Positions 39,153 through 64,000 of a DNA stretch of 64,000 nt are shown in pieces. The stretch spans positions 157,480,001 to 157,544,000 of the forward strand of contig CM097882.1 in the NCBI GenBank assembly GCA_044892505.1. The letters are read 5' to 3'. The number at the start of each line of letters is the position of its first letter. Position 1 is the stretch's first letter. The notes beneath the pieces are model-generated. The model saw nothing but the letters and a program-made list of their open reading frames with translations. It was not told where the DNA came from and did no database searches. This DNA is from Schmidtea nova. Taxonomy: Eukaryota. Both the position numbers and the translations under genes were made by a program.

Positions 39153-39366
39153 CCTATGCATTATTTACTTTAAAAAAAATCATGAGTTATATCGAACTAA
39201 ATTTACTACTAAACCTCAGTTGATTTTAGTCAATTTATTCCCTTCAAACATTCAAACTAATAAATATTTCAAATACAAGAGAAAACTTTAATGTTAACAA
39301 AAACAACAACATAAACTACAAAGTAAAGCAATAAATACAAGATAAAATATTAATTGTTGATTCATA

Positions 39367-44930: not shown

Positions 44931-45075
44931 TCGTCGTTTAAAATTTGAGCAGAGTTCTGCAAAAAATCAAAATAAGTAAAATTGACTAGCAAGTAAGAAA
45001 ATGAAATAATTATTTTACCATCGTATTTATACTGTTTTTCAATGTTAAGTAAACTCAGTCTGTCCAACAAGTGAA
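44930..45075 (-). pseudogene. hAT transposase C-terminal relic with a probable short intron
   Basis: LLDRLSLLNIEKQYKYD-(gt...ag)-ELCSNFKRRRQ. Confidence 0.4.
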
Positions 45076-46753: not shown

Positions 46754-46894
46754 ATTATATTTTCTGTTCACATATTAAACTTTCCTTATTATAATAAAAG
46801 TAATTAACAGTAATCATATGAATCGATCGTAGAACCTCAATAATACTTTTTATCTGAGTATAATTGAAACAAATAATATAGCAAGTCATGTTAA

Positions 46895-47125
46895 GGGACT
46901 TAGAACGTGCACTGAACCTTCTATCGGGAGCCCTTGAACTCAATGTGATGTTCGATCAATCATAGTTTCGATTTTTTCGATGCTCACTGTTTGCGGACAT
47001 CCATCCGTATGTTGCATTACCAAAGTTACATTGTGACGGGCAACAAGATGGTTAAGCTAATGTTTTATGTGTTGAGTTGTTGAGCCACAACAACGTCAAG
47101 GTCAAATTGACGGTCAAAAACACAC
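46895..47125 (-). repeat. Dispersed structured repeat, inverted copy
   Basis: Reverse complement of 38918-39152. Confidence 0.85.
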
Positions 47126-47559
47126 CAATATTATAAAAATTACCCTTAAAATTTTAAATTAGTTTACAGAAAATTATTGATCTTCGATAACCCCCTTTAT
47201 GAAAAAATGAAATAAAAAAACTATATGATTTTATATATATAAAATTTATTTTTAAGATTCAAGCTTAGGAGAAAATATTTGTGCAACCTGATTATTTGCT
47301 CATTTCTATCGTAAGTTGTTGTATATTTTATATATTACACCAACAGTCTGTAATTAAGGGCCAAAAAAACACTTAATACAGGCAGTTGGTATTTATTAAC
47401 TAAATATTTTTTTTAATTTAATTTTTAACTATGTATTTAAGCTATTTTACCATATTTTAAATTTATTTAATATTTTTAGTTAAATACAAATTTATTTTAT
47501 CTAGATATTTTTAGATATTTATGAAATACATAAAAAAGTAAGTTTTTATAATTTTATCA

Positions 47560-47880: not shown

Positions 47881-48010
47881 AAATTTTAAGTTAAAAGTTA
47901 AAAATTCAAAATATTTTTCGTTTTTCGTTGTTTTCTTTCTACAGTTTCGGCCATTTGAGGCCTTAACGCTTCATTTTCTGCATTTCTAAAAATATCTTTT
48001 TTTAAATATT

Positions 48011-48262
48011 GGTGGGTTGTTGATCGTCAATATGACCTTGACGTTTCTATGGCTCTCATCAACAACTCAACACATAAAACATTTAAACTACCATCTTGTT
48101 ACCCGTCACTATGTAACGTTGGTACTGTAACAAGTGGGTGGGTATTCGCAATCAGTGAGCGTCGTCAATACGAAACTATGATTGACCGAATATCTCCTGG
48201 GTCCAAGGGCTACCGATAGAAGGTTTAATGCCCATTTTGTCCCTTCTTCGACGATTTATCTA
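48011..48262 (+). repeat. Dispersed structured repeat, full copy
   Basis: Aligns with the other copies and shows a compensatory pair change. Confidence 0.9.
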
Positions 48263-48789: not shown

Positions 48790-49803
48790 ATTTTAGAATT
48801 ATAATTTATTTTGAGCAATTTTAGAAAATTTCTTGAAGAGAATATGTTGGAACTGGCCCTTCAAGCACTGTAAACTGGAAAAATCCTTGCCGGAGATTCT
48901 TATCCCTCAAACTGAATGACCATCAATTTTTATCAATAAATTTTTAGATAATTTTTTTCGTCTTTACTCTTTTTCGTTTGAGTTTTTATTATTTTTATGA
49001 AATTTTTGTAAATGGGAAATTAAAATAAACTGTAATGTAAATGGCCTATTTGATTGTACTAAGTTTGGCTGGGTATATTTAATTTTATATGGTATGGTTG
49101 AATGATAGATATAAGTGAATGAAATTTTGGTATGGTTTTTCTGGATGTATGATGCCGACTAACATAACTGTGTAGAATTTTCAGTATGGTTTGCTTGTGT
49201 GTATATAACTATTGAATGCTAATAAATGATACTGTGTATGTGTGTATATTGTATTTTAAATATATGTTGCCTGTGTATTAGTATGGGAAATGTTATTGAA
49301 TGAAATGGATGTAATTTTTTGCAAATAGGGATGCGTTATGATTTTTGAGATATCGTGGGGGGTATTTATAATATACTATATATAAATTATATAAAATATT
49401 TTTAAAATTAAAATAATAATAATAATTTTTATATTAAAATAATAATAATAATTTTTATAATAATTTTTATAAATTTTAGATTTATAATTTTACGAAAGTA
49501 ATATAATAATAAAATTTCTAATTTTTATAATATATATTTAATAATTTTTATAAATTTATAATTTTATGAAAATAATATAATAATAAAATTTCTAATTTTT
49601 ATAATATAAATTTTTATAATACTTTTTATAAATTTTAAATTTATAATTTTATGAATATAATAATAAAGTTTATAATTTTTATAATATACACTTTTATAAT
49701 ACTTTTTATAAATTTTTAATTTATAATTTTATGAAAGTAATATAATAATAAAATTTCTAATTTTTATAATATACATTTTTATATTCGAATTTTTATATTT
49801 TAA

Positions 49804-49837
<34 letters not shown>

Positions 49838-51620
49838 AAAAAATTTTTCCTATAGAATTTTGAAATTTTGGATTTTTTAAAATGATAAAATTTTCAATAT
49901 AATAATAATATTTTCGATTTAAAATTTTTATTGGTTTCAATATAAGTTTTGATTTATAAATTCTTAGGAATTTTATAAAATGACAAAATCTTTTATATCA
50001 TAACAATATTCGGAGAATTTTTGGTTCACAATTTTTCATTATAAAAATTTTTCCAATATAATAAAAAGTAAATTTTTATTTTTTGATCGAAACGAAATCC
50101 ACATCATAATAAATTTTTCATCCATAGATTTCGAAATCTAAATAAGCATTTAATCTAAAAAATTTTTATATGCTAAATAAAAATAAAATAAAAATAAGTT
50201 ATAAATTTTTCAACGAATATTTTTCGACATCGAATAAAGTTAATTTCGGTTTCATTATTATTCCATCGGATTTGAGCATTAATTCGAACGATTTACTTTT
50301 TAATATCGGTTTTTAATATCCTGGATCTTGGATGAGAAGAAAATTATTGTGAAGGTGAAGGCGAAGGACGAGTAAAATGTTTTTGCATAATTATTTTTCC
50401 TAATGGAAAAGATGTTGCTGGAGAGATTGGTTTTTACGTTTACATGTGGTATTAATTTTCAATATATCAAAAATTATAAATTCGGATAAACTACATTTAT
50501 TATAAATTAATATCATTAATATAATTTCTTGCCTTGGGCCAAGCCACTGTTCCCCAGTTGGGATGAAGTGATCATGGATGGTTAGGCTATTCACCTGAAC
50601 TCGGAAAAATGGACTGATCGATTTACGTATCGAACCAGCGATCCGCTCAGGCTACTTCCACCCGATCGGCACAAGGCCAGACACAGGCTTCAGGGGGTAT
50701 GGAAAAAAAAATTTATTTAGTTACTTTTATCATTTTTTAAGATAATATTGTGGATTTAACTCTCTGAGATTTTGTGACAAACAAAAAAAAATTATAAGTA
50801 AATATTTTAATATTCATTCGATAAAAATAGCATAACAATAATAATATAAAATTATAAAAATATTACCGGTACGGGGTAATCGAACAGGCATGGTGTTCGA
50901 TGACCCCGCGCCAACAAAAGAATAGGACTTACGAATAAATTAAAATTTATAAGTTTTCTTGAATAAAATTTCACAAAATTCTGATAAATTCCATTTTGAT
51001 GGCGGTATATATACCATCGATTTTGCGTTACCTTCAGTAGTGTAATAAAACAAATTGTTCTAGAATTTTCCATTTAATTTTTCTAAATTAATTCTAATGA
51101 TTTTCCGAAAATTAAATCCATATTTTTGTGTAATAATTTTTTACAAAACACAAATAATTTATTTTAATTCCAAATTTTTGTTTTTGAATCGAAATTTGTT
51201 CGATTTGATTTAATTTACGATATTTCGATTAATTTTAGTTCTTTTTATTGTTAATGTGAAATATTTTGATAAAATCACAATTTTCGGCTAAAATTTTTGT
51301 TAATTTTTTCTGCATGAAGGTTTTTATAACACAATTCCGTTTTTTGGGTATTTTCAATGGGTTTTGCGCCTATTCTAACTTTTAAACGTTCTTCTTTTGA
51401 TGGTATTTGATTTTTCTCGAGGTTTCAATGTAAGGGCTTTCAGACTCACAGCTAGCGCGTTCTCTACTGGTTGATGTGTTGTGAGTCCACTTCACCTTTT
51501 GTTGTTTTTCACTTAATTGCTTGGATTTTTAATGGATTTTTGGGTTAAAACTGAATCTTGCGCGCTCTCTACCTATGGGGTTATCGTTTTATTAAAACAG
51601 TTTGTGGTTTTTGCCCAACA
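48790..51620 (-). mobile_element. 3' LTR (copy C) of the giant Gypsy element; left boundary uncertain (~48300-48790)
   Basis: Begins TGTTGGG on minus at 51620, ~1.2 kb downstream of the polyprotein end; homologous to copies A and B. Confidence 0.8.
50998..51018. promoter_or_regulatory. Palindromic TATA element in the LTR
   Basis: gatggcggTATATATAccatc, conserved at 44464-44484 and (TATATAAA) at 3646-3666. Confidence 0.5.
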
Positions 51621-52844
51621 TAAAATACTCGGGGGCCCGCAAAAATTGCGTCCCGCAATTTCTCAGAGGGGTTAAGAACCAAGACTAATCAAAGGTCAAA
51701 AGGTTGTACATTATACACGAGCTACTTGGTCGTGATCATGCCGTTCGCGACAATAAAAATAAAAAGTGATAAAATTTAATAAAAAGTTAATATGTATACA
51801 TTAATATGAGTCTACATAGACTCGCAAGCAAAAAAAAAATTAAATATAATGTAATATATGTGCCTACAGCGGCTAATCAAAGTTCAATATGAGTCTACAA
51901 CGACTCGGATAAAAGTTTTATAAAATTCAGTTAAATTGTTTATATTCTGGTACTTGACGAATAGTATTGTATTGGTTGTTCTATTGTAAATTGAGGATTT
52001 GTTTCTCGTTTTCTGGGTCGTCTTGGGGATTGTTCCGCTTTGGTTGACATAGTTGATAATTCATTGGATAATAGCACGGAGCGAGTATAAGGTGATTGAA
52101 TATGCTCCGTAATTTTCTCAGTTCGGTCTTGATTTGGATCATATAATTCGGGTTTTCGGATGTGACCGCTCGTAGTTCATCATTTGACTTTGTCCATTCT
52201 TTCATAGATTATCTGATCTCGATTCATTGGACGATTTATTAAGGTAATTGTTCTGGAATTTGATTGATCGTAGGTGTGGATTTTGATTCTTGCTTCAAAG
52301 GTTTGATTTTTCTCTTGATTGGAGCTTTGTTTTAAGATTTTGCTGGCTCCCTTTTCGCATTATTGCTTTTAATTGTTTCTTTCAAATTTTTCTTGATTTA
52401 ACTTAGGTTTCTGCTTCACTTTTCTGGTTTGGATTGTTTTGATTTCATTGACTTTCTGATTTGTCTGGTCTTGATGTTTGATAATTTTTGTTGATGTTCG
52501 GTCTTTTTATTCTCTATTTTTTCTGATTTACTCAAATATTTTTCTGGCTCTCCGATTAATTCATTTTTTAATGGTAACTTTTCTGCGAACAAGCTTGACT
52601 TTGACTTTAAATGATCTCTTTAATTTAATTCGACCAGTTTTTTTTTTTTTTTTTTTTATAATACAAATAATCATACTTTTATTATAATATATTTTGTACA
52701 TTATTTACACTTCATTTTGTTTATTACACCAACGTCTTTAAGATACACACATTTTTTTGATTTTTGGTGTTTTTCATTATACAATTTTCTCATACTTTTA
52801 CGATACTATATATTTTGTACATTATTTACACTTTGTTTCGTTTG

Positions 52845-53471
52845 TTATACCAACGTCTCCTGAGGGCCGAAATATAGGTTTCGCATTCCCCCATACAATT
52901 CATTTGTAGTTCGATATATATCTGCTTCTATTATTGACGGATTTATCGTTGGTGGTAGTCCTTGCATCCACATTCCATTGAATTCTGATCCATTGCATAT
53001 CTCATATTCGTCTTCCGTCTTTACTTCTTCTAAACTGATTCCATATTCAAACTTCTCGATGCTTGGCCATTGTCTCTTTCTTTTCGGTTTTCTTTTACAT
53101 CTTCCAGTGATTTTTGCATGTTGTGTGAGAATCAAAACCAATATTGTGCCTATTATTCCGGCAGTTATCCATATCATTTTGATTGCTATTTTTGATTCTT
53201 CTACTGCTGCTGATATTGTTGTTGGAGATTCCGTTGTTGTTTGTACGATTTTGATCGGTCTCCCTCCTTGAATTATTCGTTCGGCTTCTTCCTCCGATAT
53301 ATATTTATTATAAACTGTTGATTTTGTTGTTAGTATTTGATCTTCTGTACTGAATTTTCTGGTATCGTCTACTCGTCTAGGTAATTTTGAAATAAATTGA
53401 CATGTTGGATGTTCATTTAATTTTTTGTAGAGGCATACCCGGTATTTAGTTCCTCGTTCCCATCCGGCTAC
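52845..53471 (-). CDS. Frameshifted continuation of the polyprotein: end of FN3-like repeat 4, Thr-rich stalk, TM helix and cytoplasmic tail
   Basis: The -1 frame is open from ~53495: VAGWERGTKYRVCLYKK...TTTESPTTISAAVEE...MIWITAGIIGTILVLILTQ-HAKITGRCKRKPKRKR... Confidence 0.8.
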   Translation of the reverse strand, partial: VAGWERGTKYRVCLYKKLNEHPTCQFISKLPRRVDDTRKFSTEDQILTTKSTVYNKYISEEEAERIIQGGRPIKIVQTTTESPTTISAAVEESKIAIKMIWITAGIIGTILVLILTQHAKITGRCKRKPKRKRQWPSIEKFEYGISLEEVKTEDEYEICNGSEFNGMWMQGLPPTINPSIIEADIYRTTNELYGGMRNLYFGPQETLV

Positions 53472-54770
53472 ATAATAATAAATGATTTTTCTTCTTTATT
53501 GCTCACACTTTTACACTTTTCTTGTTGTAGTTTTACTTCATAAATGCATATTCTAGCAATAAGATGTCCTTGTACGTTTTTGACTTTTATAATATCATTT
53601 TGAAAGAATTTTTCGGTTTCTTTTTGTATTCGGTTTGGAGTGATTGATATTGATATTTCTTTTCTGTAACCTTTGACTATCGTTGGTTTCTCTGTTACAG
53701 TTATTGTTGCTCTTGGGAGTCTTATTGCTTTTTCAACCGGTTCTCTCCCGCTTTCTGTGCTTGTTATTATTTGTTCTGTTGTGGTGTGTTCTTGACAAAT
53801 TGGGACTAACGTTCTCCATATGCATATTAGATACGTTGTCTTTGATTCTAACTCTTTGATTATCATTTGTTCCTTTCCCTTTACTGACTGTTGATAGCAT
53901 TTGCTAGGGTTGTCAAGCCCACTATTCATATCGACCTTTCTCCAACAAACCTTTTTGATTACTTCGTCATGGTTGTTTATTAGTATTATTTCCGTGGATT
54001 TCGTTTCTACTATCAGAGGGTAATAAGTAGTTGTTCCATTGGTTGTTGTAGTTGTCGTTATGATTTCCTTGGTGAGTTTTTCTAGACATAGTTTTTGTGT
54101 CCATATTCTTCTTATGCATATCGTGTAGCTTGTTCCTGGCTTCAATCCTGGTATTCTGAATTTTCCAATTTGGCCTGTCATTTGAAATTTACACGATAAT
54201 TGTCTGTCTTTATTTTGCATATGGATGGTTTTTATCCAACAAATTTGAGTTATAGGCTCTATCACCTTGTTTGTTATCATCATCTCTTTTTCTTTCACTT
54301 CTATTGTTGTTTTGTTCTGGATCGTCATCATAATCTTTTTATCTTGCTCTTCTTCTTCGTTTTCTTCTTCATTTTCATCTGTTGAGGTTTTTGTGACACT
54401 TTGTATTTTTTCTAGCTTGTTCCTCTCGTTTCCCATTTTCGTAATCTTTTCTTTAGCTGCACAGATTGCTCTTATTTGATTTGTCCGATATACACATATT
54501 ATATACGTTGTTCCTGATTCGAGTTTTTCGATCTTTTGCTCTTCTCCTATTGCTAATGCTGTTCTTATGCATTTCTGGTGATCACTGACTCCATTTTTCC
54601 GTATTGCAACTGTACATATTTTAATTATTAGCTCTCCTTTGATATTCGTTATCCATATATTTTCTGTATCTGTAACTATTCTCGCCTCTGCTCTCCTCTG
54701 ATCAAATATGTAATCAATTGCTTTCACCCAATTCAACATTGTCAATAATATTGTCATAATTATTGTATTT
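53400..54770 (-). other. Second signal-like segment plus four FN3-like repeats
   Basis: NTIIMTILLTMLNWVKA; repeats LESGTTYIICVY, LKPGTSYTICIR, LESKTTYLICIW, WERGTKYRVCLY. Confidence 0.75.
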
Positions 54771-57700
54771 TTACCTGGATTTTTAAGTAGACATACCGTT
54801 CGATTTTCATAGTTGGAATTTTCTTGTCCATTCTTGTTCTCTTTATTTTCGTCTTCGTTTTCGTTGTTTTTATTCTCCCATTTGTCACTGTTTCTGTGAT
54901 TTCCGTGATCGCTGTTATTATCATTTAGCTGCTGTTCATTGCTATCGTTGTCTTTATCGTCTGATTTGCCGTCATCGGGATCGTTCAGATCACCCTCGGT
55001 TTCTTTTAAAATGTCGTCCTCGACATTTATATCTTTGATTATTTCCCAATATAATTTGATAATTCTTTGTTCATCTAATTTTATTTCACCCATTTTGCAT
55101 TTCAATGTTCCAGCATCGTCGTGAAGATAACTCTTGTCTTTATTTTTGATCTTTTTTCGCCATTCTTTAACCAATTCAAGTAGTTTTTCTCTCTTTGTTT
55201 TTATTTTCATTTCTTCGTTTGGCTTGTTTGTGAATCTGAAGTCTGATCTTTTTAGTAGTGCTTTTGCTACTCTAGGTAATGTCCAATTTTCAATCAAAGC
55301 TCGCTCCATTAACACGTTTTTATCATTTTTGAACTCGTTGTTCACATTCATCAGTCCTTCTCCAGAGAGTGGATCTTTCCATTTTATCATTTTTGTAGCT
55401 ACTATTTCGTCTTTTCTCATTACTGCTCTTAATAATGGCTTTGGATTTAAACTCAGGATTTTAATGTCCTCTTGACTTGCTTTTGATAAAAGGTACTTGG
55501 CTATTGTATAATAAGGTGATCTGTAAACGTATGATAGTACAGTTTCATTGTTGTTATCCCTTTCTTTGATACTTGACCCTGTTCTTAGTAACTCCTCGAT
55601 TAAGTCTTTGGACCCTCCTTCTTCTACTGCTAGCATTAATGGTGTTTGTCCTTTCCAATTTTTTATATTCGAGTGTTGTCCACATCTTTCCATGAGTTTA
55701 ATTATTTCCATAGCTCTTTTTCCTTCTCCCTTCCTCAAGGCTACATTTAGTGGTGTTTTCTCATTGAAATCAGTCATTGTAAATAATATTGGCATTCGCT
55801 CCTTGATTATATTAATAACTTTTGGTGTTGCCTTTCCTCTGGCATAATCATCTATTATCCGATTTAGTCCGTTTATTATTTCGAATACGTGTTTGCCTTC
55901 TGTCCATTCCGGCATAATCTCTTTTGCTGTTTCTATTATCAGATCCATTTCTTTTATATGTTCGATTCTCGCATCATCCGTTATTTCTTGCTTAATTTGT
56001 AATGTTGGACTTCTCATCTTTGGTGCAAAGAATGTTGTGTCTCCAAAACATCCACATCCTTTACTCTTTCTAAGCATGCATATTTGTCTTGTCTGTGATC
56101 TGGTCATTATTCTCCTTTCCTCTGGTTCTTTTGTCGCAGTTTTTTCTACTCGTTTACATCTACACACATTCACGTATATCGGTCGAACTAACGGATTGTT
56201 GACTAATTTTACCCGGATATTATTTTTGCTAACAAATATGACTTCATATGGTCCTTTTCCCGTTCTCTGTAATTTTTTCGCTGTTCCTGGGATGATTTCT
56301 GGTGTTTCGACTATCACCCAATCGCCTAGCTTGAACTGATGTTCATGTACATTTCTCTTTTTGTCGTGTAGTTCTTTGTAACTCTCTTGATTGAATCGTA
56401 TATTCATACCTGCAACTTTCCAAATTTCTTGCATTCGCTCCTTGAATTTTGTTACGTAATCATCGATTTCCATATATTGTGATATTGGTGGTTGATATTC
56501 AAGATCCATTGGCATGTTGCATTCTCTGCCGTACATCAATTTAAACGGACTCATTTTTGTTGCCGAGTGAATCGACATACGGTATGCCATTAGACATAGA
56601 TTCACATATTCATCCCAATCCTTTTGGTGTTTACTGACATAATTTGACATCATCTCAATCAATATTCCGTTAAATCTCTCCGTTTGTCCATTTGTTTGGG
56701 GATGATATGGTGAAGTTCTCAACTTAGCTATTCTGAAATAATTGGTAACTTCGTTGATGATCTCGCTCATAAAATTTGTTCCTTGATCGGTTAAAATTTG
56801 TTTTGGTGTTCCATATCTACAACATATTTCTTCGACTAATATTTTGGCTATTGTTCTAGCTTTCTGATCTGGCATTGCAAATGCTTCTGGAAATTTTGTT
56901 AAGTAATCAGTTATTACTAATATATAAACATTTCCATGATTTGTTTCTGGTAAGGGTCCTACTACATCCATTGCGATCATTGTCATAGGTTCTGGTGGAA
57001 TTGGCATTGGTTTTAAAGGTGTTTTCATTTTACTGCCAGTGCTTTTTCGCGTTGCACATATTAGACAATTCCTAATCCATTCTTTCACGTCTTCCCCAAT
57101 ATTTGGCCAAAAATATTTCTGTTTTAATCTCGCTTCCGTTTTCTTAGCTGACATATGTCCACCAAGTTTTCCATCGTGGTATTGCATCAGGATGTCTTTC
57201 CTTCTACTTTCTGGTAAACACATGAGTCTTTTTTCTCCGTCCATTGCTAATAACCAGCCTTTTTCAATTGTATATTTGTGCCTGTTTTTCTCCATATGCT
57301 CCTTTAGTTGGCTGTTATGCTCAAAGATTTTCATATCATTCTTATTCAAATATTCGATGATTAGTTTTAGCTCTTCATCTTCATTTTGTTCCTGTTGCAG
57401 TTTAGTGAAATCAATATCTTCTGCGATTATCATACATATTCGCCTGACATCTTTGTCCATTAGTTCTTCAAACATAAATCTTGACATACAATCCGCATTT
57501 GCGTTCGCTTTCCCTGACTTTAACTTTATATATGGCGAATATTCTTGTAGCTGCATTGCCCATCTCATCAATCTGCTTGACGCTTCTTTATGCTGGCCTA
57601 ACCATACTAACGGTTGATGATCTGTTGTGATGTATATTTCGTGACCCCACAATAGATATTTGAAATGTTTAATCGCCTGAATGATTGCTAGCGCTTCTCT

Positions 57701-60700
57701 TTCCGTTACTGAGTAATTCTTCTCGTGTTTTCGAAAGGTTTTGCTGTAGTATCCTATCACTCTTTCTCTCCCATCTTCATCCCATTGTCCTAGTACGGCT
57801 CCTGACGCATATCCACTTGCGTCGGTTGCTAATAGAAATGGTTTTTTGAAGTCTGGGTGTACTAATATTGGCGATGAAATTAATTTGTCTCGCAATGCTT
57901 CGAATGCATTTTGTTGTTCTCTTCCCCAGATAAATGGTGTATCTTTTTTGACTAGCTCTTGTACAGGCTTTGCAATTCCCGCGTAGTTTTTAATAAATTT
58001 CCGATAATAACCGCATAGTCCTAAAAATTCTTGTATTTGGGTTATGGTTTTCGGTATTGGACAATTTTTTATCTTTTCGATATTTCTTGGGTCCGGCTCT
58101 TTTCCTTTAGCTGATACAATGTGACCCAAAAAGGTAACTTTTGGTTTTGCCCAATCACATTTTGAGGGTTTTAATTTTAATTTCCATTGCCTTAATCGGA
58201 TAAATACGTTTTGGATATCTTGTAAATGTTGATCGAATGTACCCGAGTAAATCAATAAATCATCAATATATACCATATATTGTTTTATCCCGTGAGTTAC
58301 AAAATTCATACATCTTTGGAATGATGCAGGTGCATTAGTTAAACCAAATGGCATCTTTTTGAACTGGTACAGATCTTTTCCGATGGTAAACGCTGTTTTC
58401 TCTCTGTCCTCTTCTTTCACTTTGATCTGCCAGTAACCGCTTTTCAAATCTAATGACGTGAAGTATGCTGCACCATGTAATGTTTGTAACATTTCGTTGA
58501 TATCTGGTAACGGGTATGTATCCCTCTTGGTTACTGCGTTCAATTGTCGATAATCAATACAAAATCGTTGGGTACCATCTTTCTTTTTTACCATTACTAC
58601 TGGAAATTGCCATGGTGAACAACTTGGTTCAATCACATCTGCGTCTAACATCTTTTGCACTTCGGCTTCGGCCACTGCTTCCTGCGCCTCCGCTAGTCGA
58701 TATGGTCTCAATGTGATCGGTGTTTCGTCTGTTAGGGGAATAGTATGTTGAGTTACATCACTCGTTCCCAAGTCTAAATCAGATGCTGCAAAGATGTCTT
58801 TAAATTCTAACAATACTGTTTTTAGTTGTTCTTTTTCAGTATCGTTTAAAATTTCACTGTCGATTACCCATAACTCTTCCACTTTACTCTCATCCTCTTG
58901 AATTTTAGGTAGTTCAATATTCAACATCGGGGTTAATTTTCCCAATCTCTCGTTTTCGTAGATGATTTTGTCTTCCTCGTCGAAATTGGTGATGTTGATT
59001 GGTATTTCGTTTTCTTTGTTGACGTTCACTATTTCTCTTGCCAATGGTAACTCTTTTCTCATCTCAAAATTTTGATTTGGTTCAAATATCATTTCACCGA
59101 CTGCCGTGTCTTTCACTTTGGTGAAACATATCATTTGCGTTCTTCCTGGTACGACAATTTTCTTTGAACACCTTACTTCCGTTTTCATTGAACAGATTTG
59201 TCCGCTTTTATCTTTCAACCTCATCGTACTCAAATCGATAACAATCTCCTTTAGTAATTCTGGCATTAAGTCTGTCCCAATGATACATGAGGCACCCAAT
59301 TGTTTTATTACAGCTAAGTAAGTAGACATCTCTACATCTTTATACTTAATATCTGACCATATTTTCCCAATAACTTTGACGGATTCTTTATTGCACGTGA
59401 CCACATCCATTGGTGCTTCTTCAATGCAAGGCCATAACATGCCTGGTATCATATTCATGTTTATTGCTGATATATTTGCACCGGTATCTATCATTGCATC
59501 CATTTCAACACCGTTGATTTCAATGGCAATAGTAAGGGTTGGTCCAGCGGATGTTCTCATCATGGCTATTGTCATTGTTTCTAGATTTTTCTCTTCGCTT
59601 TGTGGTCTGTTTAGTATTGTTGGGTCTGGTCTGTTTAGTATTGCTGGGTCAATCATTGCCCAATTTGGTTCGTAATGTGCTGGGTAGAAATTTGGCATTG
59701 GTAACATTCGTAGTCCAGCTCGTGTTTTTTCTCTCACTGTTCCTGGTCTTTGTGGGTTAGGGTATGTCATTGGTGGAAGATTTTGACCTTCCCATTGTTT
59801 TGATTTTTCTGCTTCCCATATTGGTGCGGTACCATTTGATCCGGAGTTCGCTCCTCCTTGATTTCCTTTATCATCGTTATCACTATCGTCATCATCCGAG
59901 TCTTTCCTTCGGTTATCCCACCATCTTTTCCATCCACTACGTCTGGTTTCTTTGTATTTCGTTCTCTCTGCTTCGTTTTTCATAATGAATCTAAATTTTC
60001 TACCGATCTCTTCGTCGGTTCCTTTCATCTTGGTCAGTATTCCAATTAACCTCTTTATTCTATGAATGTCTTTTGAATGCCCATGCAATACCATAGTTTT
60101 AGCCAAAAATGGTAGGAATCCAAGTGCCATTTTCCAATTGATTTGTCTCTCTCTTTTATAGATATCAAAACAAGCTAGCATCTGAGTTATAATAACTCTG
60201 ACTATTTGAATAATTAGGATTATCCCTAATATTCCTGCCATCATCTGTCCAAATACTAAGAATTTTCCCCACATAGCTTTCATCATATTATTGGTTGCGT
60301 GTTTGAAATGTTCTGGTGACAACAATAACTCGTAATTCGGACTTCCCACGAAATTTGTTCCACCGGTTATGGCTATAATATTTGATAGTACTGCTTGTCT
60401 TTGGGTTGGAAATAGTATGTGCTTTCTCGCTGCTTCTAAATCTGCATCTCTGTACACTCCACTGTGTGAAATATCTATGGGTTTAAATTCTATTTCTGTT
60501 GTTAACTCTGTTAATCCAAATCGTTTAGGTGCTGATACAATTTGCCGATTTGGAAATACTACCCATTTTCCATTTCCCATGTCATACATTGGTCCATACG
60601 CATTACTACAATTGAACTGATGGGGTTCGTAATTTGGTGGATTTATTATTCTCGTTACTGCTTGTACAAATCGACTTCTTCCTTTATAGAATATTTCCAA

Positions 60701-63700
60701 TTCGTTAGTACATCGGTTTTCTGGTATTCTTGGTCTTTCCGGTAGTCTTGCTATCTCTTTTTTACATTTGTATGTATACATAACTTCTCCCACAATTCGA
60801 CCAAAATGTCCTTCTTGCAGTGGTAATAATGGTATTGCGTTATCTGGATTCGTTATAGCCATTGCTAATTTGGTTCTCAAGATTTCTATGTTCAATAGAC
60901 AATCGTTTTGTATCAAATCGTGATATACTTTCTCTGTGGTTGCCATACCTCTATGGTATAAGAAATCCATTTTATTATTTGCGTACAAATACGTTTTAAT
61001 GTCCACTTTATCTGGTTTTGGTGCTGCTTCAGCTATCACTGTTGTAGATAGGAAAATTCCTTTGTAATTCGTTTTTATTACTAGTCTTCCGCATTTACTG
61101 ACGGTTTCACCTTTGATAAATCTCATTCCCACTCCTGGATCTTTCGATATAATTGCTGTTGGTGTATTTACTAATTTAAGTCTTTCGGTTGTCTCTTTAT
61201 GCTGGAATGTTCTTGTTCTCTTGAGCTGTTCCATTTCTTGTCTGGTTGAATCATCTTTGGGTTCGTCATAAACTTTTCCTAGTATTTCCTCGAATTCAGC
61301 TTCTTGTAATAACATTAGTCGACATTTATTCGCATCTGCCTTATAAATCAATGTTGATGCACCGGTATTACACGAGGTATGTTCTGCAGAACAACTTGGG
61401 AATTTTCTCATTGATAGCGTGTCTGGATCAAAATATCCCGGATATGTTTCTAATTTCACTTGATACATTTCTATTACCACTACATTGCTGACCACTTTTC
61501 CAAATAGCGTGTATGCTCCTCCTGTACAGCTTCCGTCTGGTTTATTGACGTATCCAGCTGCATAAACTCTTGTTATTTTAATTGCTCCTGGTTGGGCAGC
61601 TACGATTATGTTTCCTGCTAACGATATCCGTTTTGAGGTAAATGCTTCATTGCACTTTTCGCTATCCAGTGATATTACGGTTGATTCCATTCCTGGTTCG
61701 ATAATTGTTGAATATGAATATTGTCCACAGTAATACGCAAATAACTTTCTCGTAACCGTGCATTCTCTTATTTCTGCTTTGATGAGGTCTGATTCCTGAT
61801 ACACGTTGTAACTTATTTTATTCACAATTCGTTCCAACTTTTTCGGCGTGGCTTGTTTACAATCTTCCGTATCTTTTAATGAATATTTCTCGCTAAGCTC
61901 GATTTTGTCACAATCGTATACCACAAACGCTGTTGCTCCCTTTATGCACATCATCCAAATTAATATTGTGGTCAATATCGCATTCATACTCTTCCCATAT
62001 GTTCTTTGATCGCGAAAATTCATTGATCCTTCGAATTCTGTTAATAATTCTCTCAACTTTACTTGCATGGTTTCCGTTTGATCTATTTTATCTACTGAGT
62101 TGATGAATATTTTCCAACCTCCTTGTTTCATTATATACGGCTCTATCAGTTTCTCAATGATTTCTGTTATAGTGAATATGTGACCATTGGGATTATATCT
62201 GGGTGTTCTTCGCTTGTACAAGACGATCATATTGTACATTAGATATGCCAAGCTTACTAAATATTTTGCTGGTTCGTTCGTGTTTTTTGTCAGTTTTTCG
62301 ATAATTTCTTTCATTTCTGCAGGATTTCTCAACGTCATTCGTACTTTTCCTTCGATGATTTTTGAGATTATTGATTTAATCGTTATCCATAGTTGTTTAG
62401 CTTCTTGTTGGATATGATCTCTTTTTAGCGCCCTTTTTATTTCTGGGTTTGCCAATGCAAGCATATCAGATACTAATTCATTTATCCATCGGATTCCTTG
62501 TTCGGTTATTGGTGTATTACCTTTCACTTGATTTGCAACTGTCACTAGTTTGCTTACTTTTAGTTGTAATTGTTCCGTCTTGCTTACTGATGTTGGTTTT
62601 TGATTTCTTTCTGTTTGATCTTTCGCCGGCCTCCCTCTTGGGCGTTTATCTATCATCGTTCCAGCTTCTCGTCTACTTGGCTGATTATTCGCGATTTCTC
62701 TAGATGTTGTTGCTCCTCTATCTGTGATCCAATTAATCCATTCTTCAGTTGTAGAATTTTCTCTTGCTCGTTTTTGTACTTTTTCTCGGTCAGTTTCATC
62801 ATCGGTTGCTGTGATTTTTTGCCGTTTTACCCAAGGAATTCTCTGGTCATCGGTTGTTGTTTCATTTTCTATATTTGAGAATAAATCCCCTGAGTAAAAT
62901 GCTGTTTCGTCGTTTTCTCTATTCGCAATATTTGTCAGTTCTTCTAATACGTCTTCATCAGTTGTTTCGACAATAATTTCACTTGCAGCTTCCGGTATTT
63001 CTGATTCGTCTAAATTTCCGAACAATTTTCTCATCTGAGTTCGATTTCCCTCTTTTCTGATTAGTTCATTGCCTGCAATTTTATAAACAGTTAAATGATT
63101 ACTTGTTCCGATTCGTATCGGGGTTACACCAATTTCTATCTCATCATCGAGTGATCTTCCTTCGTACTGTAGATGAAATGGTAATTCAAATGGCAGTTTC
63201 TTTTTAATCTCTTTCATTTTCATGGTTGCTAATACTTCCAGCTCTTCCTTTCCAAAGTCTGGAAAATGGATTTTTAATCCACATTTTTGCGGTTCGTCAC
63301 TTTCCCATTCCATTTGCCTCCATTTTCTTCTAAGCTCATCGAATTGTTCTGGATACCAAGTGTATACCCGTCCATATTCCTCGATTTCCTTCATGAGCAT
63401 TGTCATGGTTAATCTATCCTTGCCGTTCTCGAGAATCCATTTTGCTAATTCGACTACCGCTCTTCGTTGATTTTTGGCACCTTTTTCTAGAATATCGATT
63501 AACTGTCTACTTTTTTGGGCTTCAGTTCTCTCTAATACCTCAGGGTCCGTCAGTTCATCCATATCTACAGGACGTAATCTCGAGGTTGTTTCTTGTTTTC
63601 TCAGCACGCTGATTCTGGGAATTGTCAACTTTTCCCTTACGTCTTCCTCAATTTTGCATGAAACGTAAATATCTCCTTCACTTTGATATCGAGATTTTTT

Positions 63701-64000
63701 ATCTAATAGCAAGTGTTGCAAGATAAATTTTGGTGCTCCTGATGCTATATTTTCCTCTTTTCCTGGTTTATGATAGCAGCTGCTGAGCTTTTCTGGATAA
63801 ATTTCTTCACTATGACCCTTCTCTGAATTGTAGGATGATCCTATAGACAATGTTACTTTTTGATCTAACGGCCATGTTAATTCCTCGTCATTGATCCCTT
63901 TACAGATGATATAAAATAATGACGTATGGGTTCCTTTACCAACTCCATCTCCGTTTGGATAAATTCTCATTTTTAGTTTATATCCACCTGGGTAAGTGTA
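53468..64000 (-). CDS. Giant Ty3/Gypsy polyprotein (>3500 aa, 5'-incomplete): MATH - Bcl-2-like - Env - PR - RT - RH - IN - ANK - FN3-like
   Basis: Open from base 64000 (YTYPGGYKLKMRIYP...). DTGA protease (~59488), RT with YIDD (~58270), RNase H ATDASG...TDH, integrase HHCC plus D-D-E plus GPY; order PR-RT-RH-IN. Confidence 0.95.
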   Translation of the reverse strand, partial: YTYPGGYKLKMRIYPNGDGVGKGTHTSLFYIICKGINDEELTWPLDQKVTLSIGSSYNSEKGHSEEIYPEKLSSCYHKPGKEENIASGAPKFILQHLLLDKKSRYQSEGDIYVSCKIEEDVREKLTIPRISVLRKQETTSRLRPVDMDELTDPEVLERTEAQKSRQLIDILEKGAKNQRRAVVELAKWILENGKDRLTMTMLMKEIEEYGRVYTWYPEQFDELRRKWRQMEWESDEPQKCGLKIHFPDFGKEELEVLATMKMKEIKKKLPFELPFHLQYEGRSLDDEIEIGVTPIRIGTSNHLTVYKIAGNELIRKEGNRTQMRKLFGNLDESEIPEAASEIIVETTDEDVLEELTNIANRENDETAFYSGDLFSNIENETTTDDQRIPWVKRQKITATDDETDREKVQKRARENSTTEEWINWITDRGATTSREIANNQPSRREAGTMIDKRPRGRPAKDQTERNQKPTSVSKTEQLQLKVSKLVTVANQVKGNTPITEQGIRWINELVSDMLALANPEIKRALKRDHIQQEAKQLWITIKSIISKIIEGKVRMTLRNPAEMKEIIEKLTKNTNEPAKYLVSLAYLMYNMIVLYKRRTPRYNPNGHIFTITEIIEKLIEPYIMKQGGWKIFINSVDKIDQTETMQVKLRELLTEFEGSMNFRDQRTYGKSMNAILTTILIWMMCIKGATAFVVYDCDKIELSEKYSLKDTEDCKQATPKKLERIVNKISYNVYQESDLIKAEIRECTVTRKLFAYYCGQYSYSTIIEPGMESTVISLDSEKCNEAFTSKRISLAGNIIVAAQPGAIKITRVYAAGYVNKPDGSCTGGAYTLFGKVVSNVVVIEMYQVKLETYPGYFDPDTLSMRKFPSCSAEHTSCNTGASTLIYKADANKCRLMLLQEAEFEEILGKVYDEPKDDSTRQEMEQLKRTRTFQHKETTERLKLVNTPTAIISKDPGVGMRFIKGETVSKCGRLVIKTNYKGIFLSTTVIAEAAPKPDKVDIKTYLYANNKMDFLYHRGMATTEKVYHDLIQNDCLLNIEILRTKLAMAITNPDNAIPLLPLQEGHFGRIVGEVMYTYKCKKEIARLPERPRIPENRCTNELEIFYKGRSRFVQAVTRIINPPNYEPHQFNCSNAYGPMYDMGNGKWVVFPNRQIVSAPKRFGLTELTTEIEFKPIDISHSGVYRDADLEAARKHILFPTQRQAVLSNIIAITGGTNFVGSPNYELLLSPEHFKHATNNMMKAMWGKFLVFGQMMAGILGIILIIQIVRVIITQMLACFDIYKRERQINWKMALGFLPFLAKTMVLHGHSKDIHRIKRLIGILTKMKGTDEEIGRKFRFIMKNEAERTKYKETRRSGWKRWWDNRRKDSDDDDSDNDDKGNQGGANSGSNGTAPIWEAEKSKQWEGQNLPPMTYPNPQRPGTVREKTRAGLRMLPMPNFYPAHYEPNWAMIDPAILNRPDPTILNRPQSEEKNLETMTIAMMRTSAGPTLTIAIEINGVEMDAMIDTGANISAINMNMIPGMLWPCIEEAPMDVVTCNKESVKVIGKIWSDIKYKDVEMSTYLAVIKQLGASCIIGTDLMPELLKEIVIDLSTMRLKDKSGQICSMKTEVRCSKKIVVPGRTQMICFTKVKDTAVGEMIFEPNQNFEMRKELPLAREIVNVNKENEIPINITNFDEEDKIIYENERLGKLTPMLNIELPKIQEDESKVEELWVIDSEILNDTEKEQLKTVLLEFKDIFAASDLDLGTSDVTQHTIPLTDETPITLRPYRLAEAQEAVAEAEVQKMLDADVIEPSCSPWQFPVVMVKKKDGTQRFCIDYRQLNAVTKRDTYPLPDINEMLQTLHGAAYFTSLDLKSGYWQIKVKEEDREKTAFTIGKDLYQFKKMPFGLTNAPASFQRCMNFVTHGIKQYMVYIDDLLIYSGTFDQHLQDIQNVFIRLRQWKLKLKPSKCDWAKPKVTFLGHIVSAKGKEPDPRNIEKIKNCPIPKTITQIQEFLGLCGYYRKFIKNYAGIAKPVQELVKKDTPFIWGREQQNAFEALRDKLISSPILVHPDFKKPFLLATDASGYASGAVLGQWDEDGRERVIGYYSKTFRKHEKNYSVTEREALAIIQAIKHFKYLLWGHEIYITTDHQPLVWLGQHKEASSRLMRWAMQLQEYSPYIKLKSGKANANADCMSRFMFEELMDKDVRRICMIIAEDIDFTKLQQEQNEDEELKLIIEYLNKNDMKIFEHNSQLKEHMEKNRHKYTIEKGWLLAMDGEKRLMCLPESRRKDILMQYHDGKLGGHMSAKKTEARLKQKYFWPNIGEDVKEWIRNCLICATRKSTGSKMKTPLKPMPIPPEPMTMIAMDVVGPLPETNHGNVYILVITDYLTKFPEAFAMPDQKARTIAKILVEEICCRYGTPKQILTDQGTNFMSEIINEVTNYFRIAKLRTSPYHPQTNGQTERFNGILIEMMSNYVSKHQKDWDEYVNLCLMAYRMSIHSATKMSPFKLMYGRECNMPMDLEYQPPISQYMEIDDYVTKFKERMQEIWKVAGMNIRFNQESYKELHDKKRNVHEHQFKLGDWVIVETPEIIPGTAKKLQRTGKGPYEVIFVSKNNIRVKLVNNPLVRPIYVNVCRCKRVEKTATKEPEERRIMTRSQTRQICMLRKSKGCGCFGDTTFFAPKMRSPTLQIKQEITDDARIEHIKEMDLIIETAKEIMPEWTEGKHVFEIINGLNRIIDDYARGKATPKVINIIKERMPILFTMTDFNEKTPLNVALRKGEGKRAMEIIKLMERCGQHSNIKNWKGQTPLMLAVEEGGSKDLIEELLRTGSSIKERDNNNETVLSYVYRSPYYTIAKYLLSKASQEDIKILSLNPKPLLRAVMRKDEIVATKMIKWKDPLSGEGLMNVNNEFKNDKNVLMERALIENWTLPRVAKALLKRSDFRFTNKPNEEMKIKTKREKLLELVKEWRKKIKNKDKSYLHDDAGTLKCKMGEIKLDEQRIIKLYWEIIKDINVEDDILKETEGDLNDPDDGKSDDKDNDSNEQQLNDNNSDHGNHRNSDKWENKNNENEDENKENKNGQENSNYENRTVCLLKNPGKNTIIMTILLTMLNWVKAIDYIFDQRRAEARIVTDTENIWITNIKGELIIKICTVAIRKNGVSDHQKCIRTALAIGEEQKIEKLESGTTYIICVYRTNQIRAICAAKEKITKMGNERNKLEKIQSVTKTSTDENEEENEEEEQDKKIMMTIQNKTTIEVKEKEMMITNKVIEPITQICWIKTIHMQNKDRQLSCKFQMTGQIGKFRIPGLKPGTSYTICIRRIWTQKLCLEKLTKEIITTTTTTNGTTTYYPLIVETKSTEIILINNHDEVIKKVCWRKVDMNSGLDNPSKCYQQSVKGKEQMIIKELESKTTYLICIWRTLVPICQEHTTTEQIITSTESGREPVEKAIRLPRATITVTEKPTIVKGYRKEISISITPNRIQKETEKFFQNDIIKVKNVQGHLIARICIYEVKLQQEKCKSVSNKEEKSFIIM
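55480..55790 (-). other. Ankyrin repeats downstream of integrase
   Basis: EKTPLNVA, GQTPLMLAVEEG..DLIEELLRTGSSIKERDNNNETVLSY. Confidence 0.85.
60100..61987 (-). other. Signal peptide plus class III-like envelope glycoprotein with C-terminal TM
   Basis: MNAILTTILIWMMCIKGATA|FVVYDC...YSL.D...C...YQ...ECTV...YYCG.YS Cys pattern of chuvirus-G/gB-like proteins; TM FLVFGQMMAGILGIILIIQIVRVII. Confidence 0.75.
62090..62580 (-). other. Bcl-2-like helical domain within the polyprotein
   Basis: LIEPYIMKQGGWKIFI matches BH2 (Bcl-xL HLEPWIQENGGWDTFV); preceded by amphipathic helices; no NWGR. Confidence 0.6.
63647..64000 (-). other. TRAF-type MATH domain within the polyprotein
   Basis: GYKLKMRIYPNGDGVGKGTHTSLF...WP..QKVTL...KP..EENIASGAPKF. 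Confidence 0.9.

What the first reader, a model, noticed from the sequence alone, without database searches (positions are those of the whole stretch)
48790..64000. Giant envelope-bearing Gypsy retroelement whose single polyprotein bundles apoptosis and immune-signalling modules
Seen: one minus-strand frame of over 3500 codons, open to the window edge, containing PR-RT-RH-IN in Gypsy order. Upstream lie MATH, a Bcl-2-like domain and an envelope protein; downstream lie ankyrin and FN3-like repeats, then a multi-kb LTR. Known: giant 'Burro' Gypsy elements are described in the planarian Schmidtea mediterranea (Grohme et al. 2018), so this may be a relative. I do not know whether this domain set has been reported. 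Inference: this behaves like a complex infectious retrovirus-like agent carrying a DNA-virus-style host-control kit (TRAF, vBcl-2, IkB-like ankyrins, receptor decoy). No Gag is visible, so it should lie beyond base 64000.
Basis: partly seen in the sequence, partly recalled or inferred. Interest (0 to 1): 0.95.

Follow-up and report, generated by a model that had tools for sequence, protein, structure and literature searches.

The report
Known giant Burro retroelement, coding-intact copy
This is the downstream two-thirds of an unbroken copy of a "Burro"-type giant retrovirus-like element of planarian flatworms; its odd single polyprotein (envelope gene in frame between gag and pol, plus apoptosis and ubiquitin-type modules) is real but was published in 2007-2019.

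Summary
One minus-strand frame is open for 3,510 codons, from the stop at 53468-53470 to the window edge. Sequence searches confirm a TRAF-type MATH domain, a viral fusion glycoprotein, PR, RT, RNase H, integrase and ankyrin repeats, in that order.

- **FN3-like repeats:** a confident-enough model of one repeat matches only FN3 domains.
- **Bcl-2-like module:** only weak but specific profile support at the BH1-BH2 end, and the fold test failed.

A multi-kb 3' LTR starts at 51620.

Six metagenomic relatives were recovered. Three have intact giant ORFs with Env-PR-RT-RH-IN in one frame, and others carry Gag zinc knuckles, a ubiquitin-like module and the Bcl-2-like module upstream of Env. The core is therefore not a one-off chimera.

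The domain set is already published for Burro1/GYPSM1 of Schmidtea mediterranea (Arkhipova & Yushenova 2019, citing Jurka 2007 and Grohme 2018). GAG-ENV-POL elements with gB-type Env in flatworms were reported in 2026.

Possibly new here:
- the FN3-like tail behind a hydrophobic segment;
- a predicted multi-pass membrane topology for the polyprotein.

"IkB-like" and "receptor decoy" remain guesses.

The parts
53468..64000 (-). Giant polyprotein ORF: 3,510 codons plus stop, 5' end cut by the window edge, no breaks
63650..64000 (-). TRAF-type MATH domain (aa 1-117; its first ~10 residues lie off the window)
   Evidence: Pfam TRAF-mep_MATH E 9e-19. PDB sequence hits to the TRAF2/TRAF3 TRAF-C domain, E 5e-21.
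63071..63280 (-). Ubiquitin-like module (aa ~241-310)
   Evidence: With a 3-sequence profile, all 18 PDB hits are ubiquitin, ISG15 or BAG6-Ubl, best E 0.008. The relative L005 gives a weak Pfam ubiquitin hit. Reported as SUMO-like in PMC6431247.
62612..62647 (-). AT-hook motif inside an acidic linker (aa 452-463; linker aa ~331-480)
   Evidence: Pfam AT_hook E 0.004-0.007, just under the cut-off; RGRP core; acidic composition
62081..62533 (-). Bcl-2-like helical module (aa ~490-640) with a BH2-type GGW motif
   Evidence: Pfam Bcl-2 E 0.07-0.16 over profile positions 50-100. With a 6-sequence profile, the 60 listed PDB hits (of 94 with E up to 10) are all Bcl-xL/Bcl-2 at BH2, E ~0.03. The GGW motif is conserved in L002, L004 and L005. 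The model is all-helical but of low confidence, and the fold search was not significant.
61922..61987 (-). Internal signal-peptide-like hydrophobic segment (aa 672-693)
   Evidence: Second most hydrophobic stretch of the protein; it sits directly before the glycoprotein homology.
60263..61921 (-). Envelope fusion glycoprotein ectodomain (aa 694-1246): 14 Cys, no R-x-x-R cleavage motif
   Evidence: Pfam PF24664 E 7e-69. 26-45% identity to the Env of relatives. Motif scan.
60170..60262 (-). Env transmembrane anchor (aa 1247-1277)
   Evidence: Strongest hydrophobic peak of the protein
59537..60169 (-). Env cytoplasmic tail / pre-protease linker (aa 1278-1488): acidic and proline-rich, poorly conserved
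59246..59536 (-). Retroviral aspartyl protease (aa 1489-1585), D-T-G present
58931..59245 (-). dUTPase-like stretch between PR and RT (aa ~1586-1690), weak
   Evidence: A 3-sequence profile hits yeast dUTPase chains at E 0.02-0.03. Pfam finds nothing. Reported by HHpred in PMC6431247.
58106..58894 (-). Reverse transcriptase (aa ~1703-1965), Y-I-D-D present
57539..57928 (-). RNase H (aa 2025-2154)
56081..57214 (-). Integrase: H2C2 zinc finger, DDE core and a conserved C-terminal part (aa 2263-2640)
   Evidence: D,D-35-E read
55361..55777 (-). About 3-4 ankyrin repeats (aa ~2742-2880)
   Evidence: Pfam Ank_2 E 6e-8; PDB ankyrin and DARPin hits down to E 3e-18
54776..55123 (-). Acidic, Asn-rich low-complexity spacer (aa ~2960-3075)
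54710..54766 (-). Third hydrophobic segment (aa 3079-3097), signal-anchor-like
   Evidence: Third most hydrophobic stretch of the whole protein
53471..54709 (-). Three full and one partial FN3-like repeats, each full repeat with four conserved-position cysteines (aa 3098-3510)
   Evidence: Repeat alignment. Pfam fn3 E 4e-5, 24.0 bits against a cut-off of 25. AlphaFold model of one repeat: pLDDT 74, seven strands. All 50 top PDB fold matches are FN3 domains, probability 1.00, TM 0.44-0.64.
51621..53467 (-). Non-coding internal 3' region between the ORF stop and the LTR
   Evidence: 24-42 stops in each frame of this strand; nothing like the RNase_T ORF of relatives; no repeat elsewhere in the window
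48791..51620 (-). 3' LTR. It starts at 51620 with TGTTGGGC; the lower end is not determined and may lie below 48791. It holds AT-rich tandem repeats at ~49383-49890.
   Evidence: Similarity to LTR copies at 1-4257 and ~42799-45069 begins at the same octamer; tandem repeats

Best explanation
**What it is.** Window 48791-64000 (minus strand) is the 3' part of a coding-intact Burro-type giant Ty3/Gypsy endogenous retrovirus-like element. The host is most likely a dugesiid planarian of the genus Schmidtea.

**Anatomy.** One reading frame continues upstream past the window edge, where Gag, the zinc knuckles and BIR are expected. Within the window it encodes, in order:
1. a TRAF-type MATH domain
2. 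a ubiquitin-like module
3. an acidic linker with an AT-hook
4. a Bcl-2-like module
5. an internal signal peptide
6. a fusion glycoprotein of the chuvirus/Monjiviricetes type, with a transmembrane anchor and tail
7. protease
8. a dUTPase-like stretch
9. RT, RNase H and integrase
10. about 3-4 ankyrin repeats
11. an acidic spacer
12. a hydrophobic segment
13. 3.5 FN3-like repeats

Then follow 1.85 kb of non-coding sequence and a 3' LTR of at least 2.8 kb.

**Mechanism (inferred).** Genome-length RNA made from the 5' LTR is translated into one polyprotein. The three hydrophobic segments thread it through the ER membrane in the manner of a flavivirus polyprotein:
- The Gag-to-Bcl-2 part stays cytosolic.
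- The Env ectodomain is lumenal.
- The tail, PR, RT, RH, IN and ANK are cytosolic.
- The FN3 tail is lumenal.

Signal peptidase and the element's own protease then cut out the parts. Gag, PR, RT and IN drive ordinary LTR retrotransposition. Env could allow cell-to-cell passage. The host-derived modules (TRAF-C, Ubl, Bcl-2-like, ANK, plus BIR off the window) plausibly damp cell death and signalling in expressing cells.

**Shown here:** the ORF, the domains and their order, and conservation of the core order in relatives. **Inferred:** the topology, the processing, and every accessory function.
For: - **ORF:** intact over 3,510 codons against a chance of about 1e-120.
- **Domains and order:**
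- **Catalytic motifs:** present (and the translation).
- **Hydrophobic segments:** the three strongest in the protein lie exactly before Env, after Env and before the FN3 tail.
- **FN3 fold:**
- **Bcl-2 BH2 signal:** specific across a six-member profile.
- **Ubl signal:**
- **dUTPase signal:**
- **Relatives:** L003 (3,700 aa), L004 (3,419 aa) and L006 (2,693 aa) keep Env-PR-RT-RH-IN in one unbroken frame. L003 also has a CCHC knuckle in that frame. L002 and L005 keep CCHC-Ubl-Bcl-2-like-Env in a single frame, each with one in-frame stop.
- **LTR start:** defined by three copies.
- **Literature, domain list:** PMC6431247 gives the same list and order for Burro1/GYPSM1 ORF1 (4,873 aa), including in-frame env between gag and pol.
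- **Literature, host:** the window is about 70% A+T, as reported for S. mediterranea (PMC11410931).
- **Literature, expression:** BURRO1 is transcribed, enriched in the intestine and held down by SMEDWI-2 (PMC8532177).
Against: - **No reference sequence:** no Burro reference could be fetched, so family and species assignment rest on domain order and base composition, not nucleotide identity.
- **Missing 5' part:** the 5' third (Gag, PBS, 5' LTR) is outside the window, so full length, LTR-pair age and target-site duplication are unknown.
- **Bcl-2-like fold:** not confirmed (model pLDDT 53, no significant fold match).
- **Env fold class:** not tested here. gB-type class III is taken from PMC13524379 and fits the lack of a furin-type site. 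PMC6431247 instead reported HHpred similarity to gypsy F-type Env.
- **Lineage-specific modules:** MATH, ANK and the FN3 tail are absent from the metagenomic relatives. Their presence in other copies is vouched for only by the literature (MATH, ANK) or by nothing yet (FN3).
- **PPT:** no clear polypurine tract precedes the LTR.
Confidence: 0.88

Rival explanations
1. One-off chimera: an ordinary Gypsy element into which unrelated host exons or other elements were inserted in this copy only, giving a long frame by accident or by misassembly.
For: MATH, ankyrin and the FN3-like tail are not found in any of the six metagenomic relatives. No second internal Burro copy lies in the window for comparison.
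Against: - 3,510 codons without a stop cannot be an accident.
- AT skew is uniform across 52-64 kb.
- The Ubl-Bcl-2-like-Env-PR-RT-RH-IN order recurs in one frame in distant relatives.
- The published Burro1 ORF1 has MATH and ankyrin in the same places.
Confidence: 0.03
2. A purely intracellular retrotransposon. Env and the accessory modules would be inherited baggage with no present role, kept open only because this copy is young.
For: - No evidence of particles or cell-to-cell spread is available.
- The Env tail and linkers are poorly conserved.
- Inhibiting Burro1 RNA or RT did not change the smedwi-2 phenotype (PMC8532177).
Against: - Env keeps 26-45% identity, and eight cysteines are invariant among this Env and its two closest relatives, P0005 and P0006. 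That implies long purifying selection.
- The BH2-like motif is likewise conserved.
- The hydrophobic segments are placed just as a functional glycoprotein needs.
Confidence: 0.15
3. One reading: an infectious complex retrovirus with a dedicated immune-evasion kit (TRAF mimic, vBcl-2, IkB mimic, soluble receptor decoy).
For: - A complete Env with signal peptide and anchor, and an intact pol.
- A TRAF-C domain closest to TRAF2/3.
- A Bcl-2-like BH2 signal.
- An FN3 fold behind a hydrophobic segment.
- PMC6431247 voices the provirus and 'tinkerer' hypothesis.
Against: - Nothing ties the ankyrin repeats to IkB specifically.
- An FN3 fold says nothing about decoy function, and no homologue of the tail was found.
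- The Bcl-2 fold is unconfirmed.
- Infectivity is untested.
Confidence: 0.2

Closest known systems
[quoted passage not shown] 2018; Arkhipova & Yushenova 2019, PMC6431247)
   Same: - Giant Gypsy-like element with one huge ORF.
- Same order: MATH_TRAF_C, SUMO/ubiquitin-like, BCL2-like, in-frame env, PR, dUTPase-like, RT, RH, IN, ankyrin.
- Multi-kb LTR with tandem repeats.
- AT-rich host genome.
   Different: - Nucleotide identity could not be measured because no reference sequence was at hand.
- The FN3-like C-terminal repeats and the hydrophobic segment before them are not mentioned in the text I could read.
- Which Burro subfamily this is remains unknown.
GAG-ENV-POL errantivirus-like Ty3/Gypsy elements of Platyhelminthes, Nematoda and Bryozoa with HSV/gB-type Env (PMC13524379)
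   Same: Env lies between gag and pol in a Ty3/Gypsy backbone, in a flatworm-type host. The Env family is the chuvirus-like one, which that paper calls structurally gB-like.
   Different: - That paper treats GAG, ENV and POL as separate ORFs. Here, and in L003, L004 and L006, they share one frame.
- It reports no accessory MATH, Bcl-2-like, ANK or FN3 modules.
- The gB-type fold was not tested for this Env.
Metagenomic relatives found here (L001-L006; ENA ERZ25039515 and ERZ28573565; JGI Ga0209893 and Ga0316208)
   Same: - Env of the same Pfam family, directly upstream of PR-RT-RH-IN in the same frame.
- 36-53% identity in pol.
- Where the contig reaches that far: CCHC Gag, the Ubl and the Bcl-2-like GGW motif.
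   Different: - They lack MATH, ankyrin and the FN3 tail.
- Three of them carry a separate RNase_T-like exonuclease ORF downstream of pol that the window element lacks.
- L001 is decayed: about 5 frame switches and 12 in-frame stops.
Flavivirus/pestivirus-type membrane-threaded polyproteins
   Same: Works-like only: one polyprotein whose internal signal and anchor segments would alternate cytosolic and lumenal parts, with cleavage by signal peptidase and a viral protease.
   Different: There is no homology, the element replicates by reverse transcription, and the topology is predicted from hydropathy alone.

Membership tests
Ty3/Gypsy (Metaviridae) LTR retroelement | pol domain order PR-RT-RNase H-IN | tested here: met
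   Pfam positions
Ty3/Gypsy (Metaviridae) LTR retroelement | Catalytic motifs of PR, RT and IN present | tested here: met
   D-T-G, Y-I-D-D and H-H-C-C by pattern; D,D-35-E read
Ty3/Gypsy (Metaviridae) LTR retroelement | Pair of long terminal repeats starting TG and ending CA, with PBS and PPT | tested here: inconclusive
   The 3' LTR starts with TG at 51620. Its other end, the 5' LTR and the PBS are outside or undetermined. No clear PPT.
Ty3/Gypsy (Metaviridae) LTR retroelement | Gag with CCHC zinc knuckle(s) | not testable with these tools
   Gag lies beyond base 64000. Relatives L002, L003 and L005 have CCHC upstream of Env in the same frame.
Burro family | Single giant ORF with MATH, Ubl, BCL2-like, in-frame Env, PR, dUTPase-like, RT, RH, IN and ankyrin in that order | tested here: met
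   against the description in PMC6431247. The BCL2-like and dUTPase-like signals are weak.
Burro family | Total length over 30 kb, internal region up to 25 kb | not testable with these tools
   Only 15.2 kb of the element lies in the window.
Burro family | Nucleotide identity to Repbase GYPSM1 / Burro1-4 | not testable with these tools
   No reference sequence is available. The protein databases hold no close full-length relative.
Class III (gB/G/GP64-type) fusion glycoprotein | Characteristic multi-domain fold with internal fusion loops and no priming cleavage | not tested
The indirect evidence is a PF24664 hit, no R-x-x-R in the ectodomain and the literature assignment. A profile search finds no solved relative.
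Bcl-2 family | Helical bundle with BH1 and BH2 motifs | tested here: inconclusive
   BH2-region profile hits fall only on Bcl-2/Bcl-xL, but at E ~0.03. Pfam is below its cut-off. The model has nine helices at pLDDT 53 and gives no significant fold match.
Fibronectin type III domain | Seven-strand beta sandwich of about 90 residues | tested here: met
   Model with pLDDT 74 and seven strands. All 50 top PDB matches are FN3 domains. Pfam fn3 scores 24.0 bits against a cut-off of 25.
TRAF-C / MATH domain | Sequence match above the curated threshold | tested here: met
   68.5 bits against a cut-off of 27.4; TRAF2/3 at E 5e-21
IkB | Six to seven ankyrin repeats with specific similarity to IkB proteins | tested here: not met
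   There are about 3-4 repeats. The best matches are ankyrin-1/2 and designed consensus repeats, and none of the 60 listed matches (of 298) is an IkB.
dUTPase | Full trimeric dUTPase fold with five conserved motifs | tested here: inconclusive
   Only about 100 residues match yeast dUTPase, at E 0.02-0.03. Pfam finds nothing.

The most novel reading that the evidence does not exclude
The FN3-like tail, set behind its own hydrophobic segment at the far end of pol, may be a second lumenal or extracellular product of the same polyprotein. Burro would then be a retroelement with a flavivirus-style multi-pass membrane polyprotein, displaying or secreting an FN3 module alongside its class III-type fusogen, for example as an attachment or host-modulating subunit. 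I found no mention of this tail or this topology in the literature I could read.
Probability: 0.25. Interest if true: 0.6.

Novelty: already known. Interest (0 to 1): 0.3.

Why it matters
Burro elements are among the largest retroelements known and make up a sizeable share of a major regeneration model's genome. They fuse gag, env, pol and several host-derived cell-death and signalling modules into one protein.

This copy adds nothing categorically new, but it is a clean, unbroken example. The analysis adds three small points:
- fold-level evidence for FN3-like repeats at the C-terminus;
- a testable membrane-topology model for how one frame could yield both cytosolic enzymes and lumenal glycoproteins;
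- evidence from metagenomic contigs that the in-frame Gag-Ubl-Bcl-2-like-Env-Pol core is shared by a wider clade, while MATH, ankyrin and FN3 are lineage-specific additions.

Tried and rejected
- **Full-length protein search:** it found only ordinary Gypsy pol relatives at about 30% identity and no Burro protein.
- **FN3-tail search:** no homologues.
- **Exhaustive representative search with the Ubl-Bcl-2 region:** one irrelevant weak hit, P0007.
- **Viral contig scan for Env:** nothing.
- **Env profile against solved structures:** nothing.
- **Structure prediction with relatives' rows:** I did not resend them. The Bcl-2-like segment was therefore folded alone, with poor confidence and an uninformative fold search.
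- **Species identification by exact-protein look-up of two window ORFs:** failed.
- **Grohme et al. 2018:** not held in the library.
- **Primer tables for BURRO1:** not held.
- **LTR pairs in the relatives' contigs:** none.
- **Late-domain motifs (PTAP, PPxY, YPxL):** nothing convincing.
- **Rejected, nested-insertion chimera:** see the rival explanations.
- **Rejected, the RNase_T accessory ORF of relatives is present here:** it is not.

Full report
**Observation.**
The minus strand of 53468-64000 is one open frame of 3,510 codons. It ends in a stop at 53468-53470 and runs off the window at base 64000. The other five frames of the same stretch contain 105 to 363 stops. From the strand's own base composition a stop is expected every 13 codons or so, so the chance of such an open run is about 1e-120. 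The stretch has higher G+C and a strong, uniform A-over-T bias on the coding strand compared with the rest of the window.

**Anatomy.**
Residues are counted from base 64000. Pfam places these domains:
- a MATH/TRAF domain at 1-117, cut by the window edge
- a viral fusion glycoprotein of family PF24664 (Monjiviricetes_fusion), E 7e-69
- a retroviral aspartyl protease at 1489-1582
- RT at 1804-1962
- RNase H at 2025-2154
- integrase zinc finger at 2263-2320 and core at 2336-2434
- ankyrin repeats at 2765-2841

The MATH domain is closest to the TRAF-C domains of TRAF2 and TRAF3 (E 5e-21). The ankyrin stretch matches generic ankyrin and designed consensus repeats, and no IkB appears among the listed matches. 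D-T-G, Y-I-D-D and H-H-C-C are all present, and D,D-35-E can be read from the translation.

The three most hydrophobic stretches of the whole protein are placed as follows:
- residues 672-693, directly before the glycoprotein homology, so signal-peptide-like
- residues 1247-1277, directly after it, so a membrane anchor
- residues 3079-3097, directly before the C-terminal repeats

The Env ectodomain (694-1246) has 14 cysteines and no R-x-x-R motif. That fits a fusogen needing no furin priming.

**The disputed accessory segments.**

*FN3-like tail.* Residues 3098-3510 form three full repeats and one partial repeat of about 95 residues. Each full repeat has four cysteines at matching positions. 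Pfam fn3 scores 24.0 bits against a cut-off of 25 (E 4e-5). An AlphaFold model of one repeat was built with the four repeats as its alignment. It reached pLDDT 74 with seven strands. All 50 best PDB fold matches are FN3 domains: fibronectin, monobodies, Robo3, insulin receptor and PTPRM (probability 1.00, TM 0.44-0.64). Viral matches are generic FN3 domains. 'Decoy' is a guess.

*Bcl-2-like module.* Pfam Bcl-2 reaches only E 0.07-0.16, over the BH1-BH2 half of the profile. A six-sequence profile was built from this element and five relatives. All 60 listed hits against PDB sequences (of 94 with E up to 10) are Bcl-xL or Bcl-2. They align at the BH2 motif, at E about 0.03. The GGW core is conserved in L002, L004 and L005, and Bcl-2 is the only Pfam family hit by more than one member. 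The single-sequence model is all-helical but poor (pLDDT 53), and its fold search is not significant. The result is plausible and agrees with the literature, but I have not shown the fold.

*Ubiquitin-like module.* For residues about 241-310, a three-sequence profile hits only ubiquitin, ISG15 and BAG6-Ubl (best E 0.008).

*dUTPase-like stretch.* This lies between PR and RT and gets weak support (E 0.02-0.03 to yeast dUTPase). The remainder of that spacer is the N-terminal part of RT, as in foamy-virus PR-RT.

*AT-hook.* One sits in the acidic linker.

**Ends of the element.**
Below the stop lie 1.85 kb with stops in every frame. The LTR then begins at 51620 with TGTTGGGC. The same octamer opens a second LTR copy at 4257, and a one-mismatch version opens a third at about 45069. 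Upstream of it the copies are unrelated. Similarity to the best copy runs down to 48791. The LTR is at least 2.83 kb and holds AT-rich tandem repeats. I saw no clear polypurine tract.

**Relatives.**
No close full-length protein is in the databases. An Env-only search found two metagenome proteins at 42-43% identity, and their contigs were fetched. An Env alignment then found four more loci.
- L003, L004 and L006 carry intact ORFs of 3,700, 3,419 and 2,693 residues, with Env-PR-RT-RH-IN in one frame. L003 also has a CCHC knuckle upstream in that frame.
- L002 and L005 carry CCHC, the ubiquitin-like module, the Bcl-2-like module and Env in one frame, each with a single in-frame stop.
- L001 is decayed, with about five frame switches and twelve in-frame stops. 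It sits next to an animal-type prolyl hydroxylase gene.

None of them has MATH, ankyrin or the FN3 tail. Three carry a separate RNase_T-like ORF after pol that this element lacks. The in-frame Gag-Ubl-Bcl-2-like-Env-Pol core is therefore a clade feature, and MATH, ANK and FN3 are lineage-specific additions.

**What is already known.**
Arkhipova and Yushenova (PMC6431247) describe Burro1/GYPSM1 of Schmidtea mediterranea. Its ORF1 is 4,873 residues and carries:
- Gag with three CCHC knuckles
- AIR1, Smc and BIR
- MATH_TRAF_C
- a SUMO-like module between MATH and BCL2
- a dUTPase-like motif between PR and RT
- ankyrin repeats

They credit Jurka 2007 and Grohme et al. 2018 and raise the provirus and 'tinkerer' ideas. 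The window's 3,510 residues plus about 1,360 missing N-terminal residues would fit that ORF. The window's roughly 70% A+T also fits that genome (PMC11410931). BURRO1 is expressed, enriched in the intestine and repressed by SMEDWI-2 (PMC8532177). GAG-ENV-POL Gypsy elements with gB-type Env in Platyhelminthes were reported in PMC13524379. That paper also calls the chuvirus-like glycoprotein structurally gB-like.

**How it most likely works.**
The backbone is an ordinary LTR retroelement. What is unusual is expression from one frame. Because the hydrophobic segments sit where they do, I infer co-translational threading through the ER membrane:
- The N-terminal Gag-to-Bcl-2 part is cytosolic.
- The Env ectodomain is lumenal.
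- The tail and enzymes are cytosolic.
- The FN3 tail is lumenal.

Signal peptidase and the element's protease would then release the parts. The hydrophobic segment after the Bcl-2-like module could double as its tail anchor, as in cellular Bcl-2 proteins. All of this is inference from sequence. The accessory modules plausibly act on cell-death, ubiquitin and TRAF-type signalling, but no function has been tested.

**Verdict.**
This is a real, coding-intact copy of a known and remarkable element family. The species and subfamily assignment is inferential, because no reference sequence could be fetched. The small additions from this analysis are the FN3 fold of the tail, the topology model and the wider clade seen in metagenomes.

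One search printed segment bounds with frames for the decayed relative L001. I did not use them further.

Noticed in passing
window 9841-12694: Penelope-like retroelement. A 656-aa ORF (10034-12004, minus strand) carries RT and a GIY-YIG nuclease. It is flanked by inverted 813-bp repeats that are 99.3% identical, so the insertion looks recent.
   Followed up: partly
window 1-4257 and ~42799-45069; scrap at 45470-45790: Two more Burro-type LTR copies lie in the same orientation as the element's LTR (82-85% and 73-80% identical), with no Burro coding sequence beside them. The first carries a 1.1-kb insertion (394-1518) related to 34364-35352. An inverted LTR scrap lies between them and the element.
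   Followed up: partly
window 46893-47139 and 47999-48247; also 22709-22938 and 38907-39155: A ~250-bp repeat occurs in several copies. The two copies just below the LTR are inverted and about 0.9 kb apart, like the ends of a small foldback or MITE-type element. It may mark or interrupt the undetermined low end of the LTR.
   Followed up: no
window 14017-15006 and 17086-17658: Tandem arrays with units of 176 bp and 191 bp, copies up to 97-98% identical.
   Followed up: no
window 21365-21931 (minus strand): An exon-like ORF encodes the N-terminal and catalytic part of a PP1-type Ser/Thr phosphatase (Metallophos E 5e-31). It is probably a host gene. An exact-protein look-up found no record.
   Followed up: partly
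window 17853-18371, 28714-29095, 31839-32372, 33542-34165: Remnants of other mobile elements: a hAT dimerisation domain, an unrelated Gypsy RT/RNase H fragment, a Tc5/pogo DNA-binding domain and an IS1595/ISXO2-like DDE transposase.
   Followed up: no
L001 7920-9260, L003 12169-13473, L004 10617-12107: Metagenomic relatives carry a separate ORF with a weak RNase_T-type exonuclease domain downstream of pol. The window element has nothing like it.
   Followed up: partly
window 4549-5002, 7175-8756 (three runs), 9688-9825, 16141-16275, 27887-28068, 35358-35494: Masked or gap runs of N, 2,486 bases in all. They were left untouched, and none lies inside the element.
   Followed up: no
window 62081-62125 with 61922-61987: The BH2-like GGW motif lies about 45 residues before the hydrophobic segment that also serves as the Env signal peptide. 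This spacing resembles the BH2-to-tail-anchor spacing of cellular Bcl-2 proteins as I recall it, which I did not check here.
   Followed up: no
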